From assembly GCF_964204865.1 (NCBI RefSeq), contig NC_135253.1:16616001-16680000 (forward strand): a stretch of DNA of 64,000 nt. The letters run 5' to 3'. This stretch comes from Styela clava. Its lineage: Eukaryota. The position numbers and the translations under genes are program-made. Shown here piece after piece: positions 33,553 to 63,308 of the stretch (positions within the stretch are counted from its first letter, which is position 1; every line of letters begins with the position of its first letter). The notes below the pieces were generated by a model. The model did no database searches, was not told the DNA's origin, and saw only the letters and a list, made by a program, of their open reading frames with translations.

Positions 33553-35140
33553 TTAATTACTGAACCATTTTGCTGCTTTAAACACACAAAGGTTGAAAAA
33601 GAGTAGAGGGAACGAAAAAACTGTTGAAATCCCTCCACACGTTGTGGTAGCAGCCGCAGTAGTAGTAGCAGTTACTACGCATGCCGCTTCCGAGGCTTCA
33701 TAACCAGATTTACATGCACATTTTCCTGTCGAGGTGTTGCATTCCGAGTTGGCGTCACCATTGGTTGTGCAGTCGGAGGTCGCTGCACATTTTCTGTCAA
33801 CACAAGCTGTTGCCCCAGGGATCTGATTTACTGGACATGCGCACTGTGATGATACGCAGTAGAGAGTGCTGGATCCACAAGCAGATGTGATTGTAGTTGC
33901 TGTGCAAGCTTTGGGTGTACACGATCCAGATGAAGCGTCGGCATCGGAAAGAAATCCACAGGTGCATCCGGTGGTTCCAGTTGTAGCACAATAAGAATGA
34001 GCTTCGTTGATAAAACAATCTCTGTCACCATTGCTGCAGGTACGACGCACACATGCAGTGTGTGACGTATCGACGAAGTTATCTTTGCAGTTGCAAACGT
34101 CGATCGCGGGAGTCGTATTGCAGTAACTGTTGGCATCGGAGGGTGTGCAGTCACTATCACCAGCATTGCATGTCATTGCTTCGCAGCCAGTAGTTGTGGG
34201 AGCGGGCTGTAAAATTTGACATGAAAAATAAATTAATTCTGTATCTTATAACTTCATTTGCGAAATAGTTTTGGTATCAACTGGATCTAATGCCAGCTAA
34301 CACTATAGCTATTTCTAGGGGTTTGACATAAAGTTGTGTTAGAAAATCTGTTGTACATCACTTTAATACAAAAATCGAAAACATAATATGTTAAATAGCT
34401 CTTCAGTTTGCAATCTGCATGATTAAAGATTCTCCGGTAATGAGCTTACTTCAGTTTTGGTATTACTCGAGGTGAATGAAAATAAATTATATATTTTATT
34501 ATATCTTGAATTTTATTGTTTAAGCTGAGTCCATTGGCAAAAGCTCACATGAATATTTTGATAATTTGAGTGCTCAAATACTTTTTGATTACTCTTACCG
34601 TATAATTGACATCACACACGCAAAGTATTGGAGAAGCAGAGTTGCACGTACTTGCGTTTGGTTCGCCTGTACATGTACCACCTGCGGCTGAGCAAGTTCC
34701 GTCCAATTGACTCAGACCTGTTATTAAAAAAACTTGCCTTGCCGTCTGTTTCTTAATTTTATTGTTATTTAAAACGTTATCCATCTATAATTTAATAAGT
34801 TTTTTTCAATTTCACGATTCAGTTAAATAATAGGCTTGTTTTGAAAATATTTCTGCATTAATTTTATTGTTATTTAAAACGTTATCCATCTATAATTTAG
34901 ACGTTTTTTTTCAATTTCACGATTCAGTTAAATGATAGGCTTGTTTTGAAAATATTTCTGCATTCACTATTTTAAATCAATTTTTAGAGTAAATAAATAT
35001 TGTTTGGTAAAGGAGAAATTGAAAACAAAATTGTCTCAAGAAACGACGTTTTTATAAATTTATCTAGTTTAAAGTGATAACTATACTTCACCTCCTCTTG
35101 TCATGAACAAAACACACAGCATAGAAACCAAAACCCTCAT
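33553..35140 (-). CDS. Tandem family copy A: five 6-Cys EGF-like modules, Thr stalk, GPI-type tail, ~273 aa
   Basis: Exons 35140-35092 (MRVLVSMLCVLFMTRG), 34717-34599, 34206-33553. GT-AG introns of phase 1 and 0, frame intact. Confidence 0.88.
34755..34965. repeat. ~103-bp tandem duplication in intron 1 of copy A only
   Basis: TTAATTTTATTGTTATTTAAAACGTTATCC...TTTCTGCATT occurs twice here and once in copies B, C and E. Confidence 0.85.
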
Positions 35141-36385
35141 TTTAATTGTTGTTAAGATTGATGAATCTTCGAATATTCGTCGATTTATGCTGTAATATTT
35201 GAAACAGAAATTTAGTATTATGGATTATTAACAAAGAAATTCCCCGTCCTGTCTCCCTCACGAAAATTTCGACGAAGCCAATTCCTATATTATCATTGCG
35301 CGAATAACTTTTTAAAATTACTTCAAGGATTAAATAGTTTTCAGCAGCTCTTGATAAGTACATAGCTATCATGCTATGGCGAACAGGATCTTTTTTACTC
35401 GGCACAGACCTACCACGATATCAAACAGTAGATATATTTATTGTCTTAATGTTTACATATTTTAAGATTATAAAGACAAAACTCGGGTCGCGTAAACTGC
35501 CGATTCCTAATTAGCCGACGAAAAACACAGCCCGACAATGGAAATGTCCATGTCAACTTCATTTTTCATCTGATGAAGTTATGGTAATTAAATTATTTTA
35601 TGTATATTGCATATGTTATGCATCAATTACATTGGATTTCCGAACTAAAAATCCGTTTCAAAATCGGTTCGCTTACAGTTTACACTATGTATCTACAAAT
35701 GCCAACTTTCTTGACGACATCCCATGCATTGAGTATGGTACAAATTACCATTGCTCATTGAGTATATTCAAGACATATTGGGATACGATGAACGACGAAC
35801 GGCAAGAAAGTATATTGATTGAAAAAATTATTACGACTCACCCAGTCTGGTAATCTTATTTAACTGGTAAATATCTCCAAGCGTAATGGTTCATTTGGTG
35901 ATCGTTTGCGGTTTTTATACTGAATCACCGCAGAAAAAGATTCCTTTGGATGAATGAAAGAGAATACTATTTGTATGAGAACTAGCGACTTTCACTCATA
36001 ACAAACACACTCTTTCCGATATGCTAACCCGTTTGGTTCCAAGACCTACTTAATATGTCGTCAACGACATTTTCGTCATTTGATTTTGGGAATGAATTCT
36101 CTCATATTATTACCGCAAGCAATATCAGCCAAATCCGTGTAACTTTTTGGGTTTTCAATATTTTATCATCAACTTAGAGTTTTTTGAATTATCCATATTA
36201 GGTCGAACGTTTATGCATAAAATAATATTATCGCGTAATATCAAATGAGATCAATTATTTCACAATATCGCTTCAAAATGGAGACGTTCACTCGACCAAA
36301 ACTGATACGAAACTAGGAGTTTTTTTTTAACTACCCTTTAAGAAAATTGAATTTATTTAATGGAAGCGTTGTTGACATTATACAT

Positions 36386-37182: not shown

Positions 37183-37630
37183 CTGATATACATGTTTCAT
37201 GTGATAAGTGTTGTTAGTTAGTTGTCATTCAACTTCGAGCGTCAGAATAACGAGTCTGTATTGGTATAGTAATTGTTAGCAGATGGACACGATACGCACG
37301 ATAATACTTATTCGGTCGTACGGAAAATTAAATGGGACGCCGGGATTTTGGGGGTGCGGGAACTCATAGCGATATTATGTTGTACTGAAATGCTGATTGC
37401 ATTTTACCACTTGGTGTGTTAGAATAAAGTATTTATTATTATAATTTACACTTCTGTATATCGTATGTTATACTTTCATCGTAAAATAAATATGCCAAAA
37501 GGTATTTTGCACACACTTTGACCTCGTAATTTGAAATAAGATGTTGACGTGAGCACCTCCGCGTCTGAGGTACGTTTGATTTTGGAATCATCATAATGCA
37601 AAATTCGCTCCAAAAAGCATTTCAGCACAC

Positions 37631-40048: not shown

Positions 40049-41510
40049 TTAATTACTGAACCATTTTGCTGCTTTAAACACACAAAGGTTGAACAGGAGT
40101 AGAGAGAACGAAAAAACTGTTGAAATCCCTCCAGACGTTGTGGTAGCAGCCGCAGTAGTAGTAGCAGTTACTACGCATGCCGCTTCCGAGGCTTCATAAC
40201 CAGATTTACATGCACATTTTCCTGTCGAGGTGTTGCATTCCGAGTTGGCGTCACCATTGGTTGTGCAGTCGGAGTTCGCTGCACATTCTCTGTCAACACA
40301 AGCTGTTGCCCCAGGGATCTGATTTACTGGACATGCGCATTGTAATGATACGCAGTAGAGAGTGCCGGATCCACAATCAGATGTGATTGTAGTTGCTGTG
40401 CAAGCTTTGGGTGTACACGATCCAGATGAAGCGTCGGCATCGGAAAGGAATCCACAGGTGCATCCGATGGTTCCAGATGAAGAACAATAAGAATGAGCTT
40501 CGTTGATAAAACAATCTCTGTCACCATTGGTGGTGCAGGTACGACGTTCACATGCGGAGAATGACGTATCAACAAAGTTATCTTTGCAGTTGCAAACGTC
40601 GGTCGTGGGAGCCGTATTGCAGTAAGTGTTGGGAGCCAGACCGGTACAGACACTATCAGCATTGCATGTCTTTTTTTCGCAACCAGTATCCGGAGTATCG
40701 GGCTTTAATATTAGACATAAAAAATAAATTAATTCTGTATCTTGTATCTGACCAATTTATTTGCAAAAATAATTTTCTTATCAACTGAAACTAATGCCAG
40801 CTAACACGATGATTATTTCTAGGCGTTTTGAAATAAAGTTTAATACAAAATCGGAAACAAATCCCGAATAACTCTTCAGTTTGCAATCTGCATGACAAAA
40901 GATTCTCCAGTGATAAGCTTATCTCAGTTTTGGTATTACTCGAGGTGAATGAAAATAAATTATATCTTTCATTGAATCTTAATTTTTTTTTTAGTTTTAA
41001 TCATTAGCAAAAGCTCACGCACATATTTTGATAATTTGAGTTCTCAATTACTTTTTGATAATCCTTACCGTATAATTGACATTACACACGCAAACAGGAG
41101 GAGTAGCAGAGTCACACTTATCTGCGTTTGGTTCGCCTGTACATGTACCAGCTGCGCCTGAGCAAGTTCCGTCCAATGCACTCAGACCTGTTATAAAAAA
41201 AAACTTGCCTTGTCGTCTAGTTCCTAATTTTATTGTTAAGTTAAAACGTTATCGACCTATATTTTAGTCGTTTCTTCAATTTCACGATTCAGTTAAATGA
41301 CGGGCTTGTTTTGGAATTTTTTCTGCATCTACTATTTTAAATCAATTTTTAGAGTAAATAAATATAGTTTGGTAAAGAAGAAATTGAAAAATAAAAAAAT
41401 TTGTCGCAAAAAACGATGTTTTTTTAAATCTATCTAGTGTAAAGTGATAACTATACTTCACCTCCTCTTGTCATGAACAAAACACACAGCATAGAAACCA
41501 AAACCCTCAT
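40049..41510 (-). CDS. Tandem family copy B, ~273 aa
   Basis: Exons 41510-41462, 41187-41069, 40702-40049, frame intact. The exon-3 acceptor is AAG instead of CAG. Missing from the ORF track because exon 3 has no suitable start codon. Confidence 0.82.
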
Positions 41511-44195: not shown

Positions 44196-44228
<33 letters not shown>

Positions 44229-44638
44229 ATAATAATAATAAAACACAGGAATACAATAGGTTCCCTGCTGACAAGCAGCGGGAAGCCTAATTAAATTGGA
44301 ATTGGACATCCCGGCTTATGAGTTTTCTAATTGGACACCGAGATTACTAGCGTCAGCGTACAATGCATCCAAATCAATTAATGCATCTGGATACCAAACA
44401 TCAATTTCATATTATGTGATATATCTCTTTTTCAATTTGAAATAATGTGTACTATAAATAACGCTCAAAGATCATTGTTTTGACCCGTCTGCCCTACACA
44501 GCACACTTAATTAAGGTAATAATTACATAGATAGTATTGGTATCGGAATATCGACAATATCGGCCTTTTTTGTAATATCGGCGTTTTACTCGGTATCGGA
44601 TCGGTATCGGCGACAAAAGTGTTGTCGGTACATCTCTA
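42636..44638. mobile_element. Non-autonomous hAT element, 2003 bp
   Basis: Perfect 14-bp TIR TAGAGATGTACCGA, perfect 8-bp TSD ATATGAAC, subterminal TATCGG repeats. Absent from the other units. Confidence 0.92.
43424..44290 (-). mobile_element. Helentron/HINE-like element nested in the hAT element, with a ~291-bp internal tandem repeat
   Basis: Subterminal IR AGGCTTCCCGC / GCGGGAAGCCT, (TTA)n microsatellite, 3-prime hairpin AGCTGCACGCAGCT followed by CTAG. Unit starts at 43469, 43761 and 44051. Confidence 0.8.
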
Positions 44639-45359: not shown

Positions 45360-46803
45360 ATATAAATATGCCAAAAGCTATTTTGTACAAACTTTGACCT
45401 CATAATTTGAAATAAAATGTTGACGTGAGCATTTCGGCATTTGATGTAAGTTTGTTTTTGGAATCATTATAATATAAAATTCTGTCAAAAATCATGTTTA
45501 GCACACATTTGGAACAACAACATATGAGTGTCTTCTATGGTGAACGTATAAGCTATAATGAGCTAGGAATTTCCAAGCGCATGCGACAGTCACCATACTT
45601 TTCCAACTAGTCACTGCTTCACTGCTGCTCGACGTATCATGTGATACGAAATCCCAGCATATGTTTCCTATTGCTATCTGATGGATCTAATGCATTTGAG
45701 CCAAGAGACTTTGTCTTAAGCCAATATTATAGAAGAGTTGGCGTATTTTAGCTACAAATCATATGCTGCTGAACTTAAATCTGATATTTCTTCTGGGGTG
45801 GATGGCTATGTTGAGTTTCGTTTAATTCAAGACCAGCACTGGCAATCGGTGTCCAGTTGACTTCATATAGAGAAACTTGCAATATGAAAAGTAGTTGTTG
45901 TTAATGTTTTTAAAATTTTTATTCTTAAAATTATTTGAATACGTTAGTTAAAATGTAACGTTCTCTTAAGTGTCCAGTACTAGTATCGGAGTATGCACCG
46001 GTTAATTTTTTTTCAAACTTTCTGATTGGAGCTGAAATTCATAATGGGCAGAAGTTAAGTAAAATTTCTGTAGCAAAATTTTCTGCGGTACAAACTTTCT
46101 ACGCAAATTTTTTTCAACGGAGTGAAAATTTCAAGCGATACCAACTAATATTTTCTATTTTTCGTAGACTATTATCTAAATTGTATGGATTTGAAGTTGC
46201 AGTCAATTTTATTTTACACGGCGTGCAATCTTTGAGATAATAAACATTCGAATGTAGCAAGTAGAGTCGAGTTTTGAATAATTCGTAGAAGTATAGAAGT
46301 TCCAGACACTTCTTGGAATCTATCTGTAAGCAACACCTGGGGGAAATTTACGAGTAAGCTTTTCAATCTGAAAAGAATATTCTACTTCAGACTCTCGTTT
46401 TGCAATAAGCGTTAGTTAATAAGCAAAAGTTCTGCATTTTTAATTTGTGGATTCGTCTCACCGCCAAATCTCAACATAAAAGTTGTTAACTTTGATATTG
46501 GCTGCGTATTTATTTTTTTCATAAACTAGATTACGGAAAATAAACTCTGTATATTGTTTCAACTTTTTTTTTTATTAATTGAAGCTGCCATAAAACTTTA
46601 TACTTGAAATGGGATCAGGAAAGATTCCATCAAATCTTTTCCAAGCATTAGTTACTACGACAATCGTATAAAATATAGTATATATTGTATTTTCCTAGCA
46701 AGTTGAACGAATATTTATCTGAAAATATTATTAATAAAATTGCCAAACTCGTTGAAAAATTACTGATTTGAATATATATTTCAGCACACTATAACGTTAA
46801 CTA

Positions 46804-48263
46804 TTAATTACTGAACCATTTTGCTGCTTTATATACACCAAGGTTAAAAAGAAGTAGAGGGAAAGAAAAAACTGTTGAAATCCCTCCAGACGTTGCAGTA
46901 GTTGTAGTTGCTGTAGTAGTTGTAGTAGTGGATGCTACGCATGCCGCTTCCGAGGCTTCATAACCAGATTTACATGCACATTTTCCTGTCGAGGTGTTGC
47001 ATTCCGAGTTGGCGTCACCATTGGTTGTGCAGTCGGAGGTCGCTGCACATGCTCTCTCAACACAAGCTGTTTCCCCAGGGATCTGATTTACTGGACATGC
47101 GCACTGTGATGATACGCAGTAGAGAGTGCCGGATCCACAAGTAGATGTGATTGTAGCTGTTGTGCAAGTTTTGGGTGTACACGATCCAGATGAAGCGTCG
47201 GCATCGGAAAGGAATCCACAGGTGCATCCAGTTGTAGCACAATAAGAATGAGCTTCGTTGATAAAACAATCTCTGTCACCATTGGCGCAGCTACGACGTT
47301 CACAGGCAGTGTGTGACGTATCAACAAAGTTATCTTTGCAGTTGCAAACGTCGGTCGTGGGAGCCGTATTGCAGTAAGTGTTGGGAGCCAGAGTAGTGCA
47401 GACACTGTCAGCATTGCATGTCTTTGCTTCGCAGGCATCATTCGGGGTATTGGGCTGTAAAATTTGACATGAAAAATAAATTAATTCTGTATCTTATAAC
47501 TTCATTTGCGAAATAGTTTTGGTCAACTGGATCTAATGCCAGCTAACACTATAGCTATTTCTATGGGTTTGACATGAAGTTGTGTTGGAAAATCTGTTGT
47601 ACATCACTTTAATACAAAAATCGAAAACATAATATGTTAAATAGCTCTTCAGTTTGCAATCTGCATGATAAAAGATTCTCCGGTAATAAGCTTACTTCAG
47701 TTTTGGTATTACTCGAGGTGAATGAAAATAAATTATATCTTTCATTATATCTTGAATTTTATTGTTTAAGCTGAGTCCATTAGCAAAAGCTCACATGAAT
47801 ATTTGGATAATTTGAGTGCTCAAGTACTTTTTGATTATTCTTACCGTATAATTGACATCACACACGCAAAGTGCAGGAGCAGGGCTGCACGTATTTGCGT
47901 TTGGTTCTCCTGTACATGCACCGCCTGTGCAAGCGCTCAATTGACTCAGACCTGTTAAAAAAAAAACTTGCCTTGCCGTCTGGTTCTTAATTTTATTGTT
48001 AATTTAAAACGTTATCCACCTATAATTTAGACGTTTTTCCAATTTCACGATTCAGTTGAATGATAGGCTTGTTTTAGGAATTTGTCTGCATCTACTCTTT
48101 TAAAATTTAATCAATTTTTAGAGTAAATAAATGTAGTTTAATCAAAAAAAAAAATGTCGCAAAGTACGACGTTTTTATAAATTTATCTAGTGTAAAGTAA
48201 TTACTATACTTCACCTCCTCTTGTCACGAACAAAACACACAGCATAGAAACCAGAACCCTCAT
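46804..48263 (-). CDS. Tandem family copy C, ~268 aa
   Basis: Exons 48263-48215, 47951-47845, 47454-46804. In-frame deletions in modules 1 and 3. Confidence 0.86.
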
Positions 48264-49921
48264 TTTAATTGTTGTTAAGATTAATGAATCTTCGAATATT
48301 CGTCGATTTATTCTGTAATATTCGAAACAGAAATTTAGTATTATGGGTTATTAACAAAGAAATTCCCCGTCCTGTCTCCCTCACGAAAATTTCGACGAAG
48401 CCTATTTCTATCATATCCTCGCGCGATTAACTTTTTAAAATTACTTTGATAAATAATTAGTTTTCAGGGTTAGTTCATTTATTTTTGTTTATAATAATAA
48501 AAAATTAATAGCATTTATTTTGAATGTTTCAGAATTCATTTTCGACCAAGGCATTGGTTAAGCAGCCCCTGATAAATACATGGCTATCATGCTATGGCGA
48601 ACAGGATCTTTCTAACTCGGCATTGCCCTACCATGTTATCAAACAGTAGATATATTTATTGTCTTAATCCTAGCGTAAACTGCCGGTTCGTAATCAGCGG
48701 CAAAAAACACAGTCAGACAATGGAAATGTTCATGTCAACCTCATTTTTTTTCCGATGAAGTTATGGTAAATAAACAATTTTATATATTGTTTACACAAAT
48801 TGGATTCCCAAACAAAAATCCGTTTCAAAACCGGTTCGCCTACAGTTTACACCATGTATCTACAAAATCCAACTTTCTTAAGACAACATCATATGACTAT
48901 TCCTGCATTGGTTCGAGTTACCATTGCTCATTGGGTATATTCAAGACATATTGGGTTACAAATAACTATACGAATTTTAGCATGAGAACGACGAACGGTA
49001 AGAAAGTATATTGATTGAAAAAATCATTAGACTCACCCAATCTCGCAACGTTATTCAACAGGTAAATATCTTCAACCGAATGCTTCATTTGATGATAGTT
49101 TGCAGTTTTTATACTGAATCACCGCAGAAAAAGATTTCTTTGCTTGAATGAAAGAGAATACTATTTGTTTGGGGACTAGCGAACTTCGCTTATAACAAAA
49201 GCACTCTTTCCGATATGTTATTGGTTGCAATACCTAATTTACATGTCGTCAACGACATTTTCGTCTTTTGATTAAGGACAATGAATTCTTTCATATTATT
49301 ACCACAAGCCATATCAACCAAGTCCGTGTAACTTTTGGGGTTTTCAGTATTTTAGCATCAAATATTTATACAATTCACAGTTTGTTAAATTATTCATATT
49401 AGGTCGAACGTTTATGCATAAAATGATATTATCGCATAATATCACAAATGAGATCAATTGTTTCACAATATCGCTTCAAAATGGCGACGTTCACACGATC
49501 GAGGTTGTTACTAAACAAGGATTTCATTAACTCTCCTTCGAGAAGATTAAATTTAATGCAAGCGTTTTTGACAGTTGTTTCATATGCTAGGTGTTGTTAT
49601 TCGGTTGCCATTCAATTTCCAGCGTCAGAATACCGAGTCTGTAATGGAATATTGTAATGGTTAGCAGATGAACACGATACGCGCGATAATACTTGTTGGA
49701 TATTAGTCCTTTTATGAAATACCACTTACGACTGTTGTTATTCAAACGGTTAACGGTCGTAGGGAAAAATAAATAAAACGCTGGGATTTAGGTGGGTGCG
49801 ATATTATGTTGTACTGAAATGCTGAATTTCCTTTCAACATTTAGTGTGTTAGAATGGAGTATTTATTATTATAATTTACACTTCTGTATCTCGTATGTTC
49901 TATTTTTATGGTAATATATAT

Positions 49922-50031
49922 GGCGCTCCCGGAGTATGTGTACCAAGATGACGCACAACCTGAACATAGTATGTGTACCAGGTGAGGGTTCAGGTTGCGC
50001 GCTACTTTGGTACACATACTTCGGGAGCGCC
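49922..50031. mobile_element. 110-bp Merlin-like MITE (upstream of C)
   Basis: GGCGCTCCCG..GTATGTGTACCAA / TTGGTACACATAC..CGGGAGCGCC. Same insertion site as the 45250 and 59900 copies. Confidence 0.7.
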
Positions 50032-51689
50032 ATAAAAATATGCCTTTTGCAAGCTATTTTGTACACACTTTGACCTCATACTTTGAAATAAAATGTTGAC
50101 GTGAGCATCTCGGCATCTGACGTAAGTTTGTTTTGGGGATCATTATAATATAAAACTAAGTCAAAAAGAGTCATATGAGTGTCTATTATGGTGAACGTAT
50201 AAGCCATAATGAGCTAGAAATTTCCAAGCGCATGCGACAGTCACCATACTTTTCCAACTAGTTATTTGTCTATTGCTGAAGGCGTTCACTTTGCATCTGT
50301 TTAAAGCTCTAAGATACAATACCAAGGTCTCAACAAGCCGTTTCATTTGGGGTCCGTTTCTAAAGAAATACATGTGTTGCACAAGCTACAAACTGGACTC
50401 CAGACAAGTAGTCGATGTGATGTACAACCCATTTGAACACGTTATATTGTTTGGGTGGTTTTGTATTCAAGTTGTTGCCTGGACAGGATCCTGCCATATA
50501 AATTTGATATTTTATTAAAATAAAACGCATTGCGGTATAATTTTGTAAAAGTTGTCAACTGATGCCAATTATGATGATCTAATGAATTTGAGCCATGATA
50601 CTTTGCCAATATCAGAAGAGTGGGCGTATCTTAGCTACAAATCCTACTCTGTTGAGCTTAAATCAGATATTTCTACTGGGATGGTTGGCTATGTTGAGTT
50701 TCGCTTTATTCGAGAATAGCACTGGCTATCGGTGTCCAGTTGACTTCATATAGAGAAACTTGCAATATGAAAAGTGGTTGTTGCTAATGTTTTTAAAATT
50801 TTTATTCTTGGAATTATTTGAATACGTTAGTTAAAATGTAACGTTCTTTTTAGTGTCCAGTATTAGCATCGGAGTATGCACCGGCTTATTTTTTTTCAAA
50901 CTTTCTGATTGGAGCTGAAATTCTTAATGAGCAGAAGTTAAGTAAAATTTCTGTAGCAAAATTTCCTGCGGTACAAACTTTCTACGCAAATTTTTTTCAA
51001 TGGAGTAGAAATTTCAAGCGATACCAACTAATATTTTCTATTTTTCGTAGTCTATTATCTAGCTAGATTGTATGGATTTGAAGTTGCAGTCAAATTTATT
51101 TTACACGGCGTGCAATCTTTGAGACAATGAACATTCGAATGTAGCAAGTAGAGTCGAGTTTTGAATAATTCGTAGAAGTATAGAAGTTCCAGACACTTCT
51201 TGGAATCTATCTGTAAGCAACACCTGGGGGAAATTTACGAGTAAACTTTTCACTCTGAAAAGACTATTCTACTTCAAACTCTCGTTTTGCAATAAGCGTT
51301 AGTTAATAAGCAAAAGTTCTGCATTTTTAATTTGCGGATTCGTCTCACCGCAAAATCTCAACATAAAAGTTGTTAACTTTGATATTGGCTGCGTATTTAT
51401 TTTTTTCATAAACTAGATTACGGAAAAAAAACTCTGTATATTGTTTCAACTTTTTTTTTATTAATTGAAGCTGCCATAAAACTTTATACTTGAAATGGGA
51501 TCAGGAAAGATTCCATCAAATCTTTTCCAAGCATTAGTTACTACTAAAATCGTATAAAATAAAGTATATATTGTATTTTCCTAGCAAGTTGAACAAATAT
51601 TCATCTGAAAATATTATTAATAAAATTGCCAAACTCATTGAAAAATTACTGATTTGAATATATATTTCAGCACGCTGTAACGTTAATTA

Positions 51690-53228
51690 TCAATTACTGA
51701 ACCATTTTGCTGCTTTAAACACACAATAGTTGAAAAGAAGTAGAGGGAACGAAAAAACTGTTGAAATTCCTCCACACGTTGCAGTAGTTGTAGTTGCTGT
51801 AGTAGTAGTAGTTGTAGTAGTGGATGCTACGCATGCTGCTTCCGAGGCTTCATAACCAGATTTACATGCACATTTCCCTGTTGAGGTGTTGCATTCCGAA
51901 TTGGCGTCACCATTAGTTGTGCAGTCGGAGGTCGCTGCACATGTTCTGTCAACACAAGCTGTTGCCCCAGCGATCTGATTTGCTGGGCATGCGCACACTG
52001 ATGATACACAGTAGAGAGTGCCGGATCCACAAGCAGATGCGATTGTTGATGTTGTGCATGCTTTGGCTGTACACGATCCAGATGAGCCGTCGGTAGTGGA
52101 AAGAAATCCACAGGCGCATCCGATGGTTCCAGATGAAGAACAATATGAATTAGCTTCGTTTACAACACAATCTCTGTCACCATTGGCGCAGGTTCGACGT
52201 ACACAGGCAGCGTTTGACGTATCGACAAAGTTTGCCTTGCAGTTGCAAACGTCGGTCGTGGGAGCCGTATTGCAGTAACTGTTGGTATCGGAAGGGGTGC
52301 AGTCACCATCACCACTAGCGCATGTCCTTGCTGTGCAGTCAGTATTCGGGGTAGCAGGCTGTAAAATTAGTCATGAAAAATAAATCAATTCTGTATCTTG
52401 TAACTTCATTTGCGAGATAGTTTTGGTATCAACTCGAACTAATGCCAGCTAACACAATGATTATTTCTAGGCGTTTTAACGGAAACAAATTTTAAATAGC
52501 TCTTCAGTTTGCAATCTGCATGATAAAAGATTCTCCGGTGATAAGCTTACTTCAGTTTTGGTTTTACTCGAGGTGAATAAAAATAAATTATATATTTTAA
52601 TATATCTTGAATTTTTTAGTTTTAATCGAATACTTATTCTTTATCCTTACCATATAATTGACATTACACACGCAAAGTGGAGGAGTAGAAGAGTCGCACA
52701 AAGCTGCGTTTGGTTCGCCTGTACATGTACCACCTGCGCCTGAGCAAGTTCCGTCCAATTGACTTAGACCTATTAGTTACAAAAAAATGCCGTCTTTTTT
52801 TATGAATTTATTGTTAATTCGTTATTTTTCAAATTAAAATTTACTACACGATCTGCCAACCGAATCTTTTGACTGCAGACTGAAGTACAAAATTGTTTGA
52901 AAACATTTTAATTTTACTCAAATATTTTTTTCATAAATGATTCGTACAATATTGAATTTTACGACTCAATTATTTTAGGTTTGTGTTTATTTTGGCATTT
53001 CGTCTACATCTGCTATTTTAAAAACTTGTTCAATATTTTGAATCAATAAATGTAGTTTATAAAGGAGAAAACAGGTCAGATGAAATTTTTGCAATCTCAT
53101 TTACATAAAAAATATTTTTATAAATGAATTTAGTGTAAACTAGCTACGAGAATTTTTTTTCAATATTGAAATACTTCACCTCCTCTTGCCATGAGCAAAA
53201 CACACACGATTGAAATCAAAATCTTCAT
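51690..53228 (-). CDS. Tandem family copy D (type-II leader), ~278 aa
   Basis: Exons 53228-53180 (MKILISIVCVLLMARG), 52769-52651, 52358-51690, frame intact. Confidence 0.87.
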
Positions 53229-53880
53229 TCTCTTCGTTTTCGTTTTATTTCTGGATTAAAATTACTCGAGTGCTAGCTGGTTTATTCTGCAAGTACTAAA
53301 TTTAAAATATGTATTAAACTTAAATTGAGTTTTAAAAATTATAAACCTTGAATAGTGATTTTTTGGGGGGATTGCGGGTACTTTATGGAAAAACCTAACA
53401 AAAAACGTAAAGCTCTAGTAATAATACTCTTCGCCCACAATATTATAAAGCAATACTTATTTGATCAAATGCAAAATAAATTGTGGCGCTTATGGCAGCT
53501 AATATTTGCATCTCTTAGTTAGTAATAAAACTTTTTTCATATTTTATGTCGGTTTAAAAATGCCCTCTGAATTGGATATATTGTTGTCAAATTTTTCAGA
53601 TGACAAATAAACGTTTATCAGCGGTATCAGCGGTTTCCAAGCATTTCATACGCAATCTCTTCATAATGGTTTTAAATAGCTTTACTGTTCCGAAAAGATC
53701 AACAATTGATAAGTCAGTATTAGCAAATATGACATTGTTATCTATGACTTGGGCAATATACCAATTGAATCTTACTGGAGAACTTCTGCACCACAACATA
53801 ATATAATACATAACTATATTTATGTTCCATCGGCTCGCTATGTCTGTTGTACTATAGTCTTACAAATATGGTACGGTTCG

Positions 53881-54078
53881 CAACCGTTATATATACTCAT
53901 ATTCGCGTTGATAACTATGGTAAAAAAAAACTGTTATTCCTATTCCCTTCTAATGTTTTTCTTATTTTTTCGTGCGTTTTCAACCGTTATATATACTCGT
54001 ATTCGCGTTAATAACTATGGTAGAAAAAGATTATTATTCTTATTTCCTTAGAATGTTTCTCTTATTTTTTCGTGTGTT
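53881..54078. repeat. ~100-bp tandem duplication
   Basis: CAACCGTTATATATACTC.TATTCGCGTT.ATAACTATGGTA...TTCTTATTTTTTCGTG occurs twice. Confidence 0.8.
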
Positions 54079-56669
54079 TCGCGTGACAACGTAGACGGAT
54101 TCGCACTACTGGATATTTGGATCGCACGAAATGCCCCGTTGAAAAGCGCACCTTGACAGCACAAACCTGATTTTAATTTTTTTTTAATCCTTCGTGGAGA
54201 TCCCTTGAATGCGTTACCCATGTTTCAAAAAGTGTTTAAAGACCTTGTATCAAGTTGGCATGGCAATCTAAAAGGATACACAAGGTATCAACATAACATG
54301 AGCGATGCTGAAAAAAATTCAATTTGTTATTTTTGCCCATCCACCTAAAATTAATTCACGAAATATTGTTACCATATTCATGCTGGTGTTAGAGCCTGAA
54401 TATGCTTAGCTGAAATTATTAGGTTCTATTGTGATCGAATGTGAAATCTGATAACAGGTATATTGGAGGCCTTTCCACTCACCAGTCCTTTTTCCTGTCA
54501 AGTTCAATCGCTCTGAAATATACTATTAGATTTTTATGTTTTGAAAATTACGTGTGGTAGGTACAATGTGTTTTCAATTGAAAAATAAGAGCATTCATTT
54601 CTCTTACCAGTTGGAGAAACGGTATGCTTGTCTCTTGTTGTGTTATTTATTCTTAGTATCTTGGCTGCCATAGAAAACTTCTATAGAAAACATAGGCGGA
54701 TAGTGACGACCGTTAGTATAAAAATAATATATATATGCACAATAGTCTAGTAGCTATGGGATACACATCAACTTAAATTATATTTCAGAATATATCGGCC
54801 AATAGAATTCTAAAATTAGGTTTCAATATTCTACTTATTTTTATTTATAATATCTAAGTTACGGAAATGTTAATCATAAAAGTTGAGAAAAATTGTTGAA
54901 GATAATTTCAGAAAAAATATTACCTTGTTAATATTTACAAAACTAAAACAAGAAGTAATAGTCTTATCGTAGCTGGATCATTTTTTTTAAAATTTGGTCT
55001 CAGTATGTTGATCCCTCGCTGTTGGTACAATACAAGTTTTCTAGAAGTTTTAGTCTGAGCTTAGTTGGAAATTATTAGAAAAAAACTTAAATGTTATTCC
55101 CAATTACCATTCGTATGTCCTTCTCCGTTTAAGGCTTTATCTTGAACATAATTAAATATATTGCAATTAGATTTTAACGCAGTCGTGCTAATGGAATGGG
55201 TAAGCCTGCTCATGAAGTCCGCTATTCGAATGTGTTTTCTTTACTTCTATATTGCGCAAAGCACGGCAATTGGAAAGCATAAGGGCGAGATGTTCTTTTT
55301 ATCCCATGATTACACCAGTTTGTAGAACAATGATTCACTCGTCCAAGCATGAAGAATATTATAATTTAGATTTGGAAGTTGTTTTTAAGTAGAGAAATAA
55401 TTTTGTTAACAAACTATGGATTTTTATAACATTGTTGACGACGTTACGGCGGGGCTTATACGACTTTTACTTTCGTTTATCCGGCAGATTTTCTCTATGA
55501 ATATAAATGTTTTACTCAATAGTTGAAAAATGACATTTATCCGCTTGAATTGATTTCAAAGGAGAATATTTACAAGTAAAGTTGTCTATGAAATTCATGT
55601 AATCGTATCATGCCTCATAGTGTGTTGAACGCGAATTTTGATTTCAAATATAAATTTATAGCTTATGCATATGGTTTTATCCAGAGATTTTTTATTTTCA
55701 TTTACTGCCTGTGTGTATGGATATTCTATGTATCGTAGTGATAAGATTTATATTTAGAGTGGAAATCGAATGAAACCCATGTCATTGGATGATTATTTAA
55801 CAAAACAAATGTATGCGTTATGTATGGTATGGCGCCGGTCACTTGTACAGGTCTTTGGACTCGTAGGTGAAGCGATAACATGGATAAGGGTGGGTGTACA
55901 AAACTGGTCGTACAGGCGAATCCATATGAAAAGTCAACATATGAAAATAAATACAATATACCCTCATTTACAGAGAAATATTCACTTAACCTGGCTTTAA
56001 ATGAGAGGAAGATTTGCGCAGTTGTTTGCTACAAGGTTTTATGCTTACAAATCCAATTTTATTGCGCTCGGCGGTCCAAATAATTTGTAGAAGTCAATTT
56101 TTCTACTTTTGAAATTTTATTCCATGTATATATTTCAAAAAAATTACCGCCGAACTTCGGCGCGTCGACGTAACCTTTAAAGAAAGAACCTTTATGAATT
56201 TACTGTATAGTTTCATCAAGAAACTAAAAATGTGTTATAAAAGATGGAAGTAGGATACTTGTGTGTAGACCCCCGTATATTGATATCAAAATGAACATAG
56301 TTTCACTCTTCAATCAAAAAATAAATGAGCGTGCATCAGTCAGTCGCTGGAGGCTTCTAAAGGTGCGTTTCCAGTACTATGTGTAACGAACACAGATTAC
56401 GGAAAAAAAACTCCGTATATTGTTTCAACTTTTTTATTTATTAATTGAAGCTGCCATAAAACTTTATACTTGAAATGGGATCAGGAAAGATTCCATCAAA
56501 TCTTTTCCAAGCATTAGTTACTACTAAAATCGTATAAAATAAAGTATATATTGTATTTTCCTAGCAAGTTGAACGAATATTCATCTAAAAATATTATTAA
56601 TAAAATTGCCAAACTCATTGAAAAATTACTGATTTGAATATATATTTCAGCACACTATAACGTTAACTA

Positions 56670-58152
56670 TTAATTACTGAACCATTTTGCTGCTTTATAT
56701 ACACCAAGGTTGAAAAGAAGTAGAGGGAAAGAAAAAGCTGTCGAAATCCCTCCAGACGTTGCAGGAGTTGTAGTTGCTGTAGTAGTAGTAGTTGTAGTAG
56801 TGGATGCTACGCATGCCGCTTCCGAGGCTTCATATCCAGATTTACATGCACATTTTCCTGTTGAGGTGTTGCATTCCGAGTTGGCGTCACCATTGGTTGT
56901 GCAGTCGGAGGTCGCTGCACATGCTCTCTCAACACAAGCTGTTGCCCCAGGAATCTGATTTACTGGACATGCGCACTGTGATGATACGCAGTAGAGAGTG
57001 CCGGATCCACAAGCAGATGCGATTGTAGTTGCTGTGCAAGCTTTGGGTGTACACGATCCAGATGAAGTGGAAGCGGAAAGGAATCCACAGGTGCATCCAG
57101 TGTCTCCAGATGTAGCACAATAGGAATTAGCTTCAGTGATAAAACAATCTCTGTCACCATTGGCGCAGGTACGACGTACACAGGAAGTGTGTGACGTATC
57201 AACAAAATTCACTTTGCAGTTGCAAACGTCGGTCGCGGGAGCTGTATTGCAGTAACTGTTGGTATCGGAAGGGGTGCAGTCACCATCACCACCACTGCAT
57301 GTCCTTTCTATGCAGTCATTATCCGGGGTAGTAGGCTGTAAAATTAGACATGAAAAATAAATTAATTCTGTATCTTGTAACTTCATTTGCGAAATAGTTT
57401 TGGTATCAACTGGATCTAATGCCAGCTAACATTATAGCTATTTCTAGGGGTTTGACATGAAGTTGTGTTGGAAAATCTGTTGTACATCACTTTAATACAA
57501 GAATCGAAAACATAATATGTTAAATAGATCTTCAGTTTGCAATTTGCACGATAAAAGATTCTCCGATGATAAGATTACTTCAGTTTTGGTATTACTCGAG
57601 GTGAATGAAAATAATTTATATCTTTCATTATATCTTGAATTTTAAGTCCATTAGCAAAGACTCACATGAATATTTTGATAATTTGAGTGCTCAAGTACTT
57701 TTTGATTATTCTTACCATATAATTGACATTACACACGCAAAGTGGAGTAGGATCAGAGTTGCACGTATTTGCGTTTGGTTCGTTTGAACATGTACCACCT
57801 CCGCCTGAGCAAGTTCCGTCCAATTGACTCAGACCTGTTATAAAAAAAAACTTGCCTTGTCGTCTGGTTCTCAATTTTATTGTTAATTTAATAAGTTATC
57901 GACCTACAATTTAAACGTTTTTTCAATTTCACGATTCAGTTGAATGATGTGCCTGTTTTGGGAATTTGTCTGCATCTACTATTTTAATTCAATTTTTAGA
58001 GTAAATAAATATAGTTTGATAAAGAAGAAATTGAAAACAAAATTGTCTCAAAAAACGACCTTTTTATTAATTTATCTAGTGTTAAGTAATTACTATACTT
58101 CACCTTCTCTTGTCATGAACAAAACACACAGCATAGAAACCAAAACCCTCAT
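56670..58152 (-). CDS. Tandem family copy E, ~277 aa
   Basis: Exons 58152-58104, 57834-57716, 57335-56670, frame intact. Confidence 0.88.
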
Positions 58153-59899: not shown

Positions 59900-60009
59900 G
59901 GCGCTCCCGGAGTATGTGTACCAAGATGACGCACAACCTGAACATATTATGTGTACCAGGTGAAGGTTCAGGTTGCGCGCCACCTTGGCACACATACTTC
60001 GGAAGCCCC
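59900..60009. mobile_element. 110-bp Merlin-like MITE (upstream of E)
   Basis: Same element at the same site as the 45250 and 49922 copies. Confidence 0.7.
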
Positions 60010-61682
60010 ATATAAATATGCCAAAAGCTATTTTGAACAAACTTTGACCTCATAATTTGAAATAAAATGTTGACGTGAGCATTTCGGCATTTGATGTACG
60101 TTTATTTTTGAAATCATTATAATATAAAATTCTGTCAAAAATCATGTTTAGCACACATTTGGAACAACAACATATGAGTGTCTTCTATGGTGAACGTATA
60201 AGCTATAATGAGCTAGAAATTTCCAAGCGCATGCGACAGTCACCATACTTTTCCAACTAGTCATTTGTCTATTGCTGAAGGCGTTCACTTTGCATCTGTT
60301 TAAAGCTCTAAGATACAATATCAAGGCCTCAACAGGCCGTTTCGTTTGGGGTCCGTTTCTAAGGAAATACCTGTGTTGCACAAGCTACAAACTGGACTCC
60401 AGACAAGTAGTCGATGTGATGTACAACCCATTTAAACACGTTATATCGTTTGGGTGGATTTGTATTCAAGTTGTTGCCTGGACAGGATCCTGCTATATAA
60501 ATTTGATATTTTATTAAAATAAAACGCATTGCGGTATAATTTTGTAAAAGTTGTCAACTGATGCCAATTTTGATGATCCAATGAATTTGAGCCATGATAC
60601 TTTGCCAATATCAGAAGAGTTGGCGTATGTTAGCTACAAATCCTACTCTGTTGAGCTTAAATCAGATATTTCTACTGGGATGGTTGGCTATGTTGAGTTT
60701 CGCTTTATTCGAGACTAGTACTGGCTATCGGTGTCCAGTTGACTTCATATGGAGAAACTTGCAATATGAAAAGTAGTTGTTGTTACTGTTTTTAAATTTT
60801 TTATTCTTGGAATTATTTGAATACGTTAGTTAAAATGTAACGTTCTCTTAAGTGTCCAGTATTAGTATCGGAGTATGCACCGGCTAATTTTTTTCAAACT
60901 TTCTGATTGGAGCTGAAATTCTTAATGAGCAGAAGTTAAGTAAAATTTCTGTAGCAAAATTTTCTGCGGTACAAACTTTCTACGCAAATTTTTTTCAACG
61001 GAGTGAAAATTTCAAGCGATACCAACTAATATTTTCTATTTTTCGTAGTCTATTATCTAAATTGTATGGATTTGAAGTTGCAGTCAACTTTATTTTACAC
61101 GGCGTGCAATCTTTGAGATAATAAACATTCGAATGTAGCAAGTAGAGTCGAGTTTTGAATAATTCGTAGAAGTATAGAAGTTCCAGACACTTCTTGGAAT
61201 CTATCTGTAAGCAACACCTGGGGGAAATTTACGAGTAAGCTTTTCAATCTGAAAAGAATATTCTACTTCAGACTCTCGTTTTGCAATAAGCGTTAGCTAA
61301 TAAGCAAAAGTTCTGCATTTTTAATTTGTGAATTCGTCTCACCGGAAAATCTCAACATAAAAGTTGTTAACTTTGATATTGGCTGCCTATTTATTTTTTT
61401 CATAAACTAGATTACGGAAAAAAACTTTGTATATTGTTTCAACTTTTTTTTTATTAATTGAAGCTGCCATAAAACTTTATACTTGAAATGGGATCAGGAA
61501 AGATTCCATCAAATCTTTTCCAAGCATTAGTTACTACTAAAATCGTATAAAATAAAGTATATATTGGATTTTCCTAGCAAGTTGAACAAGTATTCATCTG
61601 AAAATATTATTAATAAAATTGCCAAACTTATTGAAAAATTACTGATTTGAATATATATTTCAGCACACTATAACGTTAATTA

Positions 61683-63308
61683 TCAATTACTGAACCATTT
61701 TGCTGCTTTATACACACAAAAGTTGAAAAGAAGTAGAGGGAAAGAAAAAGCTGTTGAAATTCCTCCACACGTTGCAGTAGTTGTAGTTGCTGTAGTAGTA
61801 GTAGTAGTTGTAGTAGTGGATGCTACGCATGCTGCTTCCGAGGCTTCATAACCAGATTTACATGCGCATTTTCCTGTCGAGGTGTTGCATTCCGAGTTGG
61901 CGTCACCATTGGTTGTGCAGTCGGAGGTCGCTGCACATGCTCTCTCAACACAAGCTGTTGCCCCAGGGATCTGATTTACTGGACATGCGCACTGTGATGA
62001 TACGCAGTAGAGAGTGCCGGATCCACAAGTAGATGCGATTGTAGCTGTTGTGCATGCTTTGGGTGTACACGATCCAGATGTAGCGTCGGCATCGGAAAGA
62101 AATCCACAGGTGCATCCGGTGGTTCCCGTTGTAGCACAATAAGAATGAGCTTCGTTGATAAAACAATCTCTGTCACCATTGCTGCAGCTACGACGTACAC
62201 AGGCAGTGTGTGACGTATCAACAAAGTTATTTTTGCAGTTGCAAACGGCGGTCGTGGGAGCCGTATTGCAGTAACTTTCTGGTTCGGTGCAGTCACTAGC
62301 ACCACTAGGGCATGCTTTTGCTTCGCAGTCAGTAGTTGCGCCATTGGGCTGTAAAATTAGTCATGAAAAATAAATTAATTCTGTATCTTGTAACTGCATT
62401 TGCAAAATAGTTTTGGTATCAACTGGATCTAATGCCAGCTAATACCATAGCTATTTCTAGGGGTTTGACATAGAGTTGTGTTAGAAAATCTGTTGTACAT
62501 CACTTTAATACAAAAATCGAAAACATAATATGTTAAATAGCTCTTCAGTTTGCAATCTGCATGATTAAAGATTCTCCGGTAATGAGCTCACTTCAGTTTT
62601 GGTATTACTTGAGGTGAATGAAAATAAATTATATCTTTCGTTATATCTTGAATTTTATTGTTTAAGCTGAGTCCATTAGCAAAAACTCACATAAATATTT
62701 TGATAATTTGAGTGCTCAAGTACTTTTTGATTATTCTTACCGTATAATTGACATTACACACGCAAAGTGGAGTAGGAGTAGTAGAATCACACGTATCTGC
62801 GTTTGGTTCGCCTGTACATGTACCACCTGCGCCTGAGCAAGTTCCGTCCAATTGACTTAGACCTGTTAGTAACAAAAAAATTGCCGTCTTTTTCATGAAT
62901 TTATTGTCAATACGTTATTTCTAAATAAAACTTTACTACACAATCTGACAACTGAATCTTTTGACTGCAGACTAAAGTATAAAATTGTTTTAAAAGTTTT
63001 AAATTTTACTCATAAATGATTCCTACAATATTGAATTTTACGACTCAATTATTTTAGGTTTGTGTTTATTTTGGCATTTTGACTACATCTGCTATTTTAA
63101 AAACTTATTCAATATTTTGAATCAATAAATGTAGTTTTGTAAAGGAGAAAACAGGTCAGATGAAATTTTTGCAATCTCATTTACATAAAGAATATTTTTA
63201 TAAATGAATTTAGTGTAAACTAGGTACGAGAATTTTTTTTCAATATTGAAATACTTCACCTCCTCTTGCCATGAGCAAAACACACACGATTGAAATCAAA
63301 ATCTTCAT
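61683..63308 (-). CDS. Tandem family copy F (type-II leader), ~278 aa
   Basis: Exons 63308-63260, 62862-62741, 62348-61683, frame intact. Confidence 0.87.

What the first reader, a model, noticed from the sequence alone, without database searches (positions are those of the whole stretch)
33900..62862. Coding patches are shuffled between paralogs (gene-conversion-like mosaicism)
Seen: different segments group the copies incompatibly. NADSVCT.LAPNTYC unites B+C. GDGDCTPSDTNSYC unites D+E. CSSSGTIGC unites B+D. RRSC and CTTATI.STC unite C+F. FINEAHSYC unites A, B, C, F. The stalk and 3-prime flank unite A+B against C-F. Leader exon and upstream DNA unite D+F, yet intron 2 of F (392 nt) resembles that of A (392 nt), not D (292 nt). 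Inference: short-tract gene conversion or unequal crossover generates combinatorial module variants.
Basis: partly seen in the sequence, partly recalled or inferred. Interest (0 to 1): 0.8.

Follow-up and report, generated by a model that had tools for sequence, protein, structure and literature searches.

The report
Mosaic tandem surface-protein genes, sea squirt
Six neighbouring copies of a sea-squirt (Styela clava) gene for a small cysteine-rich surface protein have repeatedly copied short stretches into one another, a real but familiar way for gene families to evolve.

Summary
The window holds six intact, same-strand, three-exon paralogs (A-F) in Styela clava. Each encodes a signal peptide, five EGF-like six-cysteine modules, a Thr-rich stalk and a hydrophobic tail.

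The mosaic exceeds chance:
- Neighbouring sites are less incompatible than permuted ones (0/5000).
- None of the 105 possible trees fits all seven blocks (AU test).
- Simulations on the best single tree almost never reach the observed incompatibility.
- Four exon-3 tracts of 37-102 bp are globally significant (B-C, D-E, A-F, D-F).

Both ends of the genes agree on (A,B),(C,E),(D,F), while intron 2 and module 1 disagree. So internal patches were replaced with the flanks kept, which is the mark of gene conversion. This sits on top of a ~10-kb C+D to E+F tandem duplication.

Module 1 is an island of old divergence (77-89% identity, dS about 0.27) inside flanks that are 95-100% identical. Amino-acid variation falls towards the membrane.

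Nothing points to somatic shuffling. The reads were too short to bridge the junctions. The family appears Styela-restricted and uncharacterised. First readers noted similar mosaics at other loci of this genome (unverified).

Verdict: a new member of a known kind, of moderate interest.

The parts
33553..35140 (-). Paralog A. Exons 35140-35092, 34717-34599, 34206-33553 (stop TAA). Intron 2 is 392 nt.
   Evidence: Leader search, six-copy alignment, exon table with GT-AG introns, intact ORF.
40049..41510 (-). Paralog B. Exons 41510-41462, 41187-41069, 40702-40049. Equals RefSeq XP_077968335 (P0003).
   Evidence: The exon 2 and exon 3 translations are contained exactly in P0003.
46804..48263 (-). 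Paralog C. Exons 48263-48215, 47951-47845 (12 nt shorter than in the others), 47454-46804. Equals RefSeq XP_077968301 (P0001).
   Evidence: The exon translations are contained exactly in P0001.
51690..53228 (-). Paralog D. Exons 53228-53180 (type-II leader MKILISIVCVLLMARG), 52769-52651, 52358-51690 (stop TGA). Intron 2 is 292 nt.
56670..58152 (-). Paralog E. Exons 58152-58104, 57834-57716, 57335-56670. Its 3'UTR and exon 3 are covered by RNA-like contigs.
   Evidence: In run X6, depth is 350-670 over bins 56678-57274, lower in the 3'UTR bins down to about 56459, and zero in introns and intergenic DNA.
61683..63308 (-). Paralog F. Exons 63308-63260 (type-II leader, identical to D's), 62862-62741, 62348-61683 (stop TGA). 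Intron 2 is 392 nt.
40571..40638 (-). B side of the B-C conversion-like tract in module 1 (C side: 47323-47390). The two are identical at all 21 polymorphic sites, within a 79-bp perfectly identical stretch.
   Evidence: GENECONV-like test: global P 0.001 (exon 2 to 3' flank) and 0.024 (exon 3 only). Coordinates. B and C are only 79-81% identical in exon 2 and intron 2.
57256..57292 (-). E side of the D-E tract in module 1 (D side: 52279-52315). The two are identical at 16 polymorphic sites, within a 49-bp identical stretch.
   Evidence: Global P 0.015; coordinates.
62082..62183 (-). F side of the A-F tract covering module 2 (A side: 33934-34035). 21 polymorphic sites are identical.
   Evidence: Global P 0.007. 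Module 2 is 98.4% identical between A and F but 84.1% between D and F.
61822..62729 (-). Interior of F (intron 2 to module 4), closest to A and C. It is bounded by D-like sequence on both sides (61413-61820, and the exon 2/leader side above about 62768).
   Evidence: Nearest-neighbour painting, block identities, 200-bp BLAST painting.
40788..40912 (-). B-D shared block in intron 2 (10 informative BD sites plus shared indels; D side about 52438-52485). There is a second BD patch in module 2 (B 40467-40483, D 52123-52139, the CSSSGTIGC motif).
   Evidence: The intron 2 block rejects the flank tree (p-AU 0.0075 and 4.6e-6).
46445..56392 (.). Unit 1 (C + D + D's upstream) of a ~10-kb two-gene tandem duplication. 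Unit 2 runs from 56394 past the window end to about 66577 (E + F + F's upstream).
   Evidence: Self-BLAST: 46528-53628 matches 56394-63711 at 89.8%. L001 1-2577 matches 53861-56392 at 94.9%.
18696..21997 (-). Larger same-strand relative: a multi-module cysteine-rich gene with a 231-bp coding tandem repeat. It served as an outgroup for module 2.
   Evidence: (49% identity), and (about 70% DNA identity to module 2).

Best explanation
A-F are six functional-looking tandem paralogs of a Styela-restricted surface glycoprotein. Each has a signal peptide, five EGF-like six-cysteine modules, a Thr-rich stalk and a hydrophobic membrane-anchor tail.

Their mosaicism comes from repeated germline recombination between misaligned copies. 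The main process is short non-crossover gene conversion; detectable tracts run from about 40 to 350 bp, and up to about 900 bp in F. This is superimposed on unequal-crossover events: a ~10-kb C+D to E+F tandem duplication, and older exchanges that produced three combinations of two 5'-end types (ABCE and DF) with two 3'-end types (AB and CDEF).

Conversion keeps introns, the membrane-proximal modules and the flanks 95-100% alike. The membrane-distal modules (exon 2 and module 1) persist as old, diverged cassette types. Either selection favours diversity there, or their divergence itself blocks heteroduplex formation.

Shown: the mosaic, its statistical significance, its geometry, and the gradient of variation. 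Inferred: the molecular mechanism, that it happens in the germline, and the role of selection.
For: - Gene models and intact ORFs. B and C equal RefSeq proteins.
- Informative splits lie in blocks: DF 196 sites upstream to intron 1; BD in intron 2; BC and DE in module 1; AB in the stalk and 3' flank.
- PHI permutation gives 0/5000.
- Pairwise tracts are globally significant.
- No topology of 105 is accepted by all blocks. The upstream and 3' blocks agree with each other but share no accepted tree with intron 2. With module 1 the 3' block shares none and the upstream block one.
- Simulated homoplasy on one tree is insufficient.
- The C/D to E/F duplication has a baseline divergence of about 5%, yet C-E and D-F differ by 18-19% in module 1. 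Meanwhile B-C share a perfect 79-bp stretch and D-E a perfect 49-bp stretch there.
- Mean dS is 0.27 in module 1 against 0.08-0.15 in modules 2-4. dN falls from about 0.2 (exon 2, module 1) to 0.016 (module 4).
- Mosaicism also occurs in intergenic DNA.
Against: - There is only one haploid assembly. No population, pedigree or sister-species data are available, so timing and direction are inferred.
- Within the first 350 bp of exon 3 the PHI statistic is not significant. Some site-level sharing there may be parallel substitution.
- Double crossovers could mimic conversion.
- The read check used short contigs that do not bridge the mosaic junctions.
- dN/dS near 1 does not prove positive selection.
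Confidence: 0.8

Rival explanations
1. Unequal crossing-over alone: serial duplication and deletion by misaligned crossovers produced hybrid genes, without non-crossover conversion.
For: - A ~10-kb two-gene tandem duplication is present.
- The 5'-end and 3'-end types combine as AB, CE and DF, as a hybrid-gene model predicts.
- F's distal 3' flank switches from C-like to D-like.
Against: - Each crossover changes everything on one side of the breakpoint. Here both ends of the genes keep one concordant tree while interior blocks conflict.
- Every copy changes nearest neighbour ten or more times within 1.5 kb.
- The tracts are 37-173 bp long.
Confidence: 0.12
2. Parallel or convergent substitution at a few hypervariable codons under selection produces apparent patch sharing without any exchange.
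For: - PHI is not significant inside the 5' half of exon 3.
- About 50% of site pairs are incompatible there.
- dN/dS is about 1 in exon 2 and module 1.
Against: - Shared patches include synonymous differences, shared indels and intron blocks (BD in intron 2, AC in intron 2).
- Simulation on a single tree does not reach the observed incompatibility even in the 5' half: 0.504 against a maximum of 0.486, Rmin 19 against a maximum of 18.
- Perfect 79-bp and 49-bp identities span 21 and 16 polymorphic sites.
Confidence: 0.03
3. Assembly artefact: chimeric or collapsed paralogs, or haplotigs placed in tandem.
For: - Reads could not be made to bridge the junctions.
- The older S. clava assembly carries an A/B-alternating gene that could be a collapse.
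- The C+D and E+F units abut exactly.
Against: - The window has no gaps.
- The copies differ by 10-20% in the mosaic zone, and the patches are tens of bp long and nested. That is far below the scale at which read-overlap chimeras arise.
- All six ORFs and all twelve introns are intact.
- WGS contigs from another data set cover every bin of 52300-58250 at 95-100%.
- RNA-like contigs match E's exon 3.
- The two units differ by 5-19%, more than expected for alleles.
Confidence: 0.04
4. Somatic diversification: programmed shuffling in somatic or immune cells.
For: None found. It rests only on analogy with conversion-based repertoires.
Against: - The mosaics are fixed in a germline-type reference assembly.
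- No joints or alternative junctions appeared in any run laid.
- There is no pseudogene donor bank; the genome holds only six copies plus two distant relatives.
Confidence: 0.01

Closest known systems
Interlocus (ectopic) gene conversion and concerted evolution in tandem gene families. Textbook cases, cited from my own knowledge: fetal globin genes, RHD/RHCE, opsins, CYP21.
   Same: Tandem same-strand paralogs. Short internal tracts are copied between copies. Segment trees conflict. Homology boundaries are sharp, here at the intron 1/exon 2 junction and at the stalk.
   Different: Here exchange does not simply homogenise. It leaves an island of old divergence (module 1), and each of the six genes ends up with a different combination.
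MHC-type pattern: introns homogenised by recombination while exons encoding the recognition surface stay old and diverse (own knowledge of the HLA class I literature).
   Same: Intron 2 is 94-97% identical among A, C, E and F. Next to it, module 1 is 77-89% identical with dS about 0.27. Variation is concentrated in the membrane-distal modules.
   Different: There is no sequence or fold relationship. No polymorphism or trans-species data are available here. Positive selection is not demonstrated (dN/dS 0.76-1).
Sea urchin Sp185/333 (SpTransformer) immune genes: small clustered genes with a leader exon and mosaic element patterns (own knowledge).
   Same: An invertebrate deuterostome. Small, tightly clustered same-family genes with a separate leader exon, and mosaic sharing of sequence blocks attributed to recombination.
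   Different: Sp185/333 mosaics are presence/absence of elements in a cysteine-free protein. Here the mosaics are substitution patches in a fixed cysteine scaffold. No similarity was found in any search.
Ascidian vitelline-coat EGF-repeat proteins HrVC70/HaVC80, candidates for self/nonself recognition (PMC9265791).
   Same: A stolidobranch ascidian. Runs of EGF-like modules, with variation at restricted inter-cysteine and inter-domain sites.
   Different: A-F have no ZP domain, only five modules, and a Thr stalk plus a hydrophobic tail. No homology was tested or found. Expression site is unknown.
Plasmodium P25/P28 ookinete surface proteins: four EGF-like domains plus a GPI anchor (PMC9664031).
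   Same: The architecture only: a short string of EGF-like modules tethered to the membrane.
   Different: An unrelated organism, with no significant sequence match. Only the C8 relative P0012 gives a sub-threshold Pvs28 EGF hit of 19.7 bits.

Membership tests
Gene-conversion mosaics among tandem paralogs (a process, not a protein family) | Adjacent segments support incompatible trees | tested here: met
   No topology of 105 is accepted by all seven blocks. The flank tree is rejected by intron 2 (p 0.0075) and module 1 (p 0.0015). The module 1 tree is rejected by the 3' block (p 1e-53).
Gene-conversion mosaics among tandem paralogs (a process, not a protein family) | Incompatibility is clustered along the sequence beyond permutation and beyond homoplasy on one tree | tested here: met
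   PHI-type test 0/5000. AliSim parametric null is exceeded. Not met within the 5' half of exon 3 taken alone.
Gene-conversion mosaics among tandem paralogs (a process, not a protein family) | Unexpectedly long identical tracts between specific pairs | tested here: met
   Global P for exon 3 alone: A-F 0.007, D-E 0.015, D-F 0.02, B-C 0.024.
Gene-conversion mosaics among tandem paralogs (a process, not a protein family) | Flanking markers retained on both sides of a tract (non-crossover) | tested here: met
   F has D-like flanks on both sides and an A/C-like interior. The upstream and 3' blocks share accepted trees.
Gene-conversion mosaics among tandem paralogs (a process, not a protein family) | Events observed directly (pedigree, sperm typing, segregating tracts) | not testable with these tools
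   The only hint is one other assembly's protein, an A/B mosaic that may be a collapse.
EGF-like domain superfamily | Six cysteines with the C-x-C spacing at Cys4-5, repeated | tested here: met
   Cysteine spacings such as 6,8,8,1,11 / 6,8,7,1,12 / 8,6,4,1,10 / 5,9,6,1,10 are conserved in all six copies.
EGF-like domain superfamily | Profile match above the curated threshold | tested here: not met
   The best hit is EGF_laminin at 14.5-16 bits against a cut-off of 21. There is no PDB sequence match. The C8 relative P0012 carries true EGF_CA and TSP_1 domains after its homologous N-terminal region.
EGF-like domain superfamily | EGF fold | tested here: inconclusive
   The AlphaFold2 model has mean pLDDT 37, so no fold search was run.
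GPI-anchored surface proteins | N-terminal signal peptide, plus a C-terminal small-residue site followed by a hydrophobic tail | tested here: inconclusive
   A leader exon and a C-terminal hydrophobic stretch are present. The hydrophobic run is followed by a polar tail, KAAKWFSN, which is atypical. No GPI predictor was available, so a short transmembrane anchor is equally possible.
Metallothioneins (the name given by the older annotation) | Match to a metallothionein family profile | tested here: not met
   No metallothionein family appears in the Pfam scans even at E up to 10. The name reflects cysteine richness only.
HrVC70-type vitelline-coat proteins | EGF repeats followed by a ZP domain in the precursor | tested here: not met
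   There is no ZP domain in A-F. The feature is taken from PMC9265791.

The most novel reading that the evidence does not exclude
The array is a hypervariable cell-surface recognition locus of a solitary ascidian, for gamete self-incompatibility, allorecognition or immune recognition. Conversion among six paralogs continually deals new combinations of membrane-distal cassettes, so individuals differ in their repertoire. The different A/B mosaic in the older assembly would be one such variant.
Probability: 0.1. Interest if true: 0.7.

Novelty: new member of a known kind. Interest (0 to 1): 0.35.

Why it matters
It gives a clean, statistically supported example of conversion-driven mosaicism in a tunicate. 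An uncharacterised, apparently Styela-restricted surface-protein family has membrane-distal modules that stay diverse while the rest of each gene is homogenised.

That pattern marks the family as a candidate recognition molecule worth an expression and polymorphism study in this invasive species.

It is also a practical warning. Reads and transcripts from these copies will cross-map, and annotation pipelines can create false cross-paralog isoforms.

Tried and rejected
- Pfam scans of exon products and of the RefSeq proteins found nothing above cut-off.
- The PDB sequence search found nothing.
- The AlphaFold2 model was too poor (pLDDT 37) to search by fold.
- The protein-atlas search could not read the protein.
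- A four-copy global alignment of 2.45 kb of upstream DNA gave a spurious AB|CE signal, because copy-specific insertions were forced to align. I discarded its distal part and relied on local BLAST painting instead.
- The laid reads gave no splice joints and no bridging contigs. They therefore neither confirm long-range structure nor support cross-paralog splicing.
- The big neighbouring gene was tested as a possible donor. It is only about 70% identical, apart from one 33-bp stretch at 88% in E, which is too little to claim.
- Literature searches found no description of this locus.
The full-length proteins used (P0001-P0004, P0012) are database records.


Full report
WHAT IS THERE. The window is 35% G+C eukaryotic DNA without gaps. 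It is C4:16616001-16680000 of a 377-Mb assembly.

The organism is Styela clava. The exon 2 and exon 3 translations of copies C and B are contained exactly in RefSeq proteins XP_077968301 (P0001) and XP_077968335 (P0003) of that species.

Six paralogs lie head to tail on the minus strand. Each has three exons:
- a 49-nt leader in phase 1;
- a 107-122-nt exon 2;
- a 651-669-nt exon 3.

All twelve introns are GT-AG and all ORFs are intact.

The product is a signal peptide, five six-cysteine modules with EGF-like spacing (one in exon 2, four in exon 3), a Thr-rich stalk and a hydrophobic C-terminal segment.

The genome holds only these six copies, a larger relative 12 kb away in the window, and one relative on contig C8.

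CHECK OF THE OBSERVATION. The intron 2 lengths (A 392, F 392, D 292) are exact. D and F have identical leaders, and upstream DNA that occurs nowhere else in the genome. The finding's end coordinate is the first base of F's exon 2; F's leader lies 400 nt further on.

IS IT MORE THAN CHANCE? I aligned the six units from 690 nt upstream of the ATG to 270 nt past the stop, giving 2858 columns. The 343 informative sites fall into blocks:

| Split | Location (columns) | Sites |
|---|---|---|
| DF against the rest | 146-1368, stopping within 10 nt of the exon 2 acceptor | 196 |
| BD | intron 2 | 10, plus shared indels |
| BD | module 2 | a further patch |
| BC and DE | module 1 | |
| AB | 2433-2768 (stalk and 3' flank) | 28 |

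Four tests followed.

1. A PHI-type statistic (incompatibility between neighbouring informative sites against 5000 permutations) gave 0/5000 for the whole unit, for exon 2 to the 3' flank, and for exon 3. It was not significant within the first 350 bp of exon 3 alone, where half of all site pairs are incompatible whatever their distance.

2. A GENECONV-like test asked for the longest run of polymorphic sites identical in a pair, with site order permuted and P corrected over all pairs. It gave four significant tracts inside exon 3: A-F 102 bp (P 0.007), D-E 37 bp (0.015), D-F 97 bp (0.02) and B-C 68 bp (0.024). Further tracts lie in intron 2 and the 3' flank. B and C share a perfect 79-bp stretch in the most variable part of the gene, and D and E a perfect 49-bp stretch.

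3. I scored all 105 unrooted six-taxon trees on seven blocks defined by gene structure, using the AU test. No tree is accepted by all blocks. The upstream block and the stalk/3' block accept the same trees, of the form (A,B),(C,E),(D,F). They share no accepted tree with intron 2. With module 1 the 3' block shares none and the upstream block shares one.

4. I simulated 300 alignments on the best single tree with its fitted HKY+G model. For exon 3:

| Measure | Observed | Simulated |
|---|---|---|
| Incompatible fraction | 0.483 | mean 0.309, max 0.490 |
| Rmin | 26 | max 24 |

For the 5' half alone all three measures exceed every replicate.

So one tree with homoplasy does not explain the data, even where PHI is blind.

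GEOMETRY AND HISTORY. The two ends agree and the interior conflicts. Internal patches were therefore replaced while the flanks stayed. That is what non-crossover conversion produces and what single crossovers do not.

F is the clearest case. Its leader, intron 1 and stalk/3' flank are 92-100% D-like, and its exon 2 is closest to D overall (94%) though it contains a short B-like patch. Its interior is closest to A and C over about 900 bp, from intron 2 to module 4 (61822-62729). Module 2, for example, is 98.4% identical to A and 84.1% to D.

Every copy changes nearest neighbour ten or more times between exon 2 and the 3' flank.

Crossover-type events also occurred. Window 46528-53628 matches 56394-63711, and the match continues 2.6 kb past the window end at 94.9%. 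So C+D and E+F are a ~10-kb tandem duplication with a neutral baseline of about 5%. Against that baseline, C-E and D-F differ by 18-19% in module 1, so the interiors were overwritten after the duplication.

Two 5'-end types (ABCE, DF) and two 3'-end types (AB, CDEF) occur in three combinations, as expected from an old hybrid-forming exchange.

Exchange is not confined to coding DNA. E's upstream region, for instance, alternates between B-like (94-98%) and C-like stretches.

AN ISLAND OF DIVERGENCE. Non-coding flanks reach 95-100% identity between some copies. Module 1 is only 77-89% identical between any two copies. A and F have no partner above 83% there, although intron 2 right beside it is 95-97% identical among A, C and F.

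Mean divergence by module:

| Region | dS | dN |
|---|---|---|
| Exon 2 | | about 0.17 |
| Module 1 | 0.27 | 0.20 |
| Module 2 | 0.145 | 0.10 |
| Module 3 | 0.08 | 0.07 |
| Module 4 | 0.11 | 0.016 |

The dS values show that the module 1 types are old rather than recently hypermutated.

dN/dS is about 1 in exon 2, 0.76 in module 1 and 0.14 in module 4. Variation is thus greatest at the membrane-distal tip.

I infer that conversion homogenises most of the unit. The distal cassettes resist it, through selection for diversity, through heteroduplex rejection at high divergence, or both. Positive selection itself is not shown.

EXTERNAL EVIDENCE. I laid four public runs on 52300-58250.
- WGS contigs of the same species label cover all 30 bins at 95-100%, with 1-2% differences. 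They come from another individual or the other haplotype.
- A transcriptome-sized run covers only E's 3'UTR and exon 3. Depth is 350-670 over the exon-3 bins, and nothing lies in introns or intergenic DNA. An E-type gene is therefore expressed.
- No joints were seen, and the contigs are too short to bridge the mosaic junctions. The assembly's long-range structure is not independently confirmed.

Three points argue against artefact: the patches are tens of bp long and nested, the copies differ by 10-20%, and all ORFs and splice sites are intact.

The older S. clava assembly encodes a gene named "copper metallothionein 2-like" (P0002). Its exon 3 is 88.9% A-like and 88.0% B-like. It alternates between the two at least nine times and has seven residues seen in none of the six copies.

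WHAT THE PROTEIN IS. Evidence on family membership:
- No Pfam family passes its cut-off; the best is EGF_laminin at 16 bits against 21.
- There is no PDB sequence match.
- The AlphaFold2 model is unusable.
- A full scan of 1.84 billion representatives found one real relative, S. clava LOC120328339 (P0006/P0012; E = 1.4e-23 in that scan). It aligns at 33% identity over 269 columns in a pairwise BLASTP, and its homologous N-terminal region is followed by true EGF_CA and TSP_1 domains.

The family is therefore EGF-like by cysteine pattern and by context. In these libraries it is restricted to Styela. The metallothionein name is a misnomer. Whether the tail is a GPI signal or a short transmembrane anchor is open.

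COMPARISON AND VERDICT. Mechanistically this is ordinary interlocus gene conversion plus unequal crossover in a tandem family. It also shows the MHC-like feature of homogenised non-coding DNA around an old, diverse recognition-type exon region.

It resembles the sea urchin Sp185/333 clusters in layout and mosaicism, but not in sequence or in the kind of mosaic. It resembles ascidian HrVC70-type proteins only in having variable EGF-like modules (PMC9265791), and it lacks their ZP domain.

I found no paper on this locus. First readers of this scan flagged conversion-like mosaics at several other loci of the same genome (unverified). That suggests the process is common in this genome rather than special to this array.

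Nothing supports somatic shuffling.

The finding is real and well supported. It is a new member of a known kind.

LIMITS.
- There is one assembly only.
- My PHI, GENECONV-like and Nei-Gojobori implementations are my own scripts.
- The block boundaries for the AU tests follow gene structure, but I chose them after seeing the split map.
- The look-up of encoding contigs and the protein atlas were unavailable.

Noticed in passing
Proteins P0002, P0005 and P0004 (older S. clava annotation), compared with window leaders at 58152-58104, 35140-35092/41510-41462 and 53228-53180/63308-63260: Three annotated 'isoforms' share one exon 2+3 body but carry an E-type, an A/B-type and a D/F-type leader. All leaders are 49 nt in phase 1, so any leader can splice in frame to any exon 2. 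This is either read-through splicing across paralogs or an annotation artefact from cross-mapped junction reads. No such joint was seen in the runs laid.
   Followed up: partly
window 18696-21997 (minus strand): A large relative of A-F: an ORF of at least 790 aa made of cysteine-rich modules. It has a 231-bp coding tandem repeat (6.4 copies, 91% matches) and a hydrophobic C-terminus.
   Followed up: partly
window 42640-44500 (upstream of B): A B-specific insertion holding an ~870-bp repeat. The repeat has at least 80 matches genome-wide at 90-98% identity, often in tandem arrays on other contigs. It includes a 292-bp tandem repeat at 43459-44117.
   Followed up: partly
window 34753-34964 (intron 1 of A): A 105-bp tandem duplication (2 copies, 95%) explains why A's intron 1 is 374 nt against about 270 nt in B, C and E.
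   Followed up: yes
window 57105-57137 against 19494-19526: E alone matches the large neighbouring gene at 88% over 33 bp in module 2, where the other copies are 68-70% identical. This is either a retained ancestral state or a micro-conversion from the distant paralog.
   Followed up: no
C-terminal region of exon 3 in all copies (for example A 33553-33640): The number of extra cysteines near the anchor differs between copies. A, D and F have TCGG plus a Cys in the hydrophobic tail (27 Cys in exon 3). B has one extra (26). C and E have none (25). This is another split that conflicts with the flank tree. The unpaired Cys might allow dimerisation or lipidation.
   Followed up: no
window 47845-47951 (exon 2 of C): C's exon 2 is 12 nt shorter and has a rearranged start to its first module (LSACTGGAC instead of LDGTCSG.GGTC). 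It still has five cysteines.
   Followed up: no
Run X5 laid on window 52300-58250: A large run filed under a different organism label holds parts of this locus at 95-99% identity. It is probably S. clava DNA under another label, or a very close relative.
   Followed up: no
window 51690-51692 and 61683-61685: D and F end in TGA, while A, B, C and E end in TAA. The change is part of the DF-type 3' end.
   Followed up: yes
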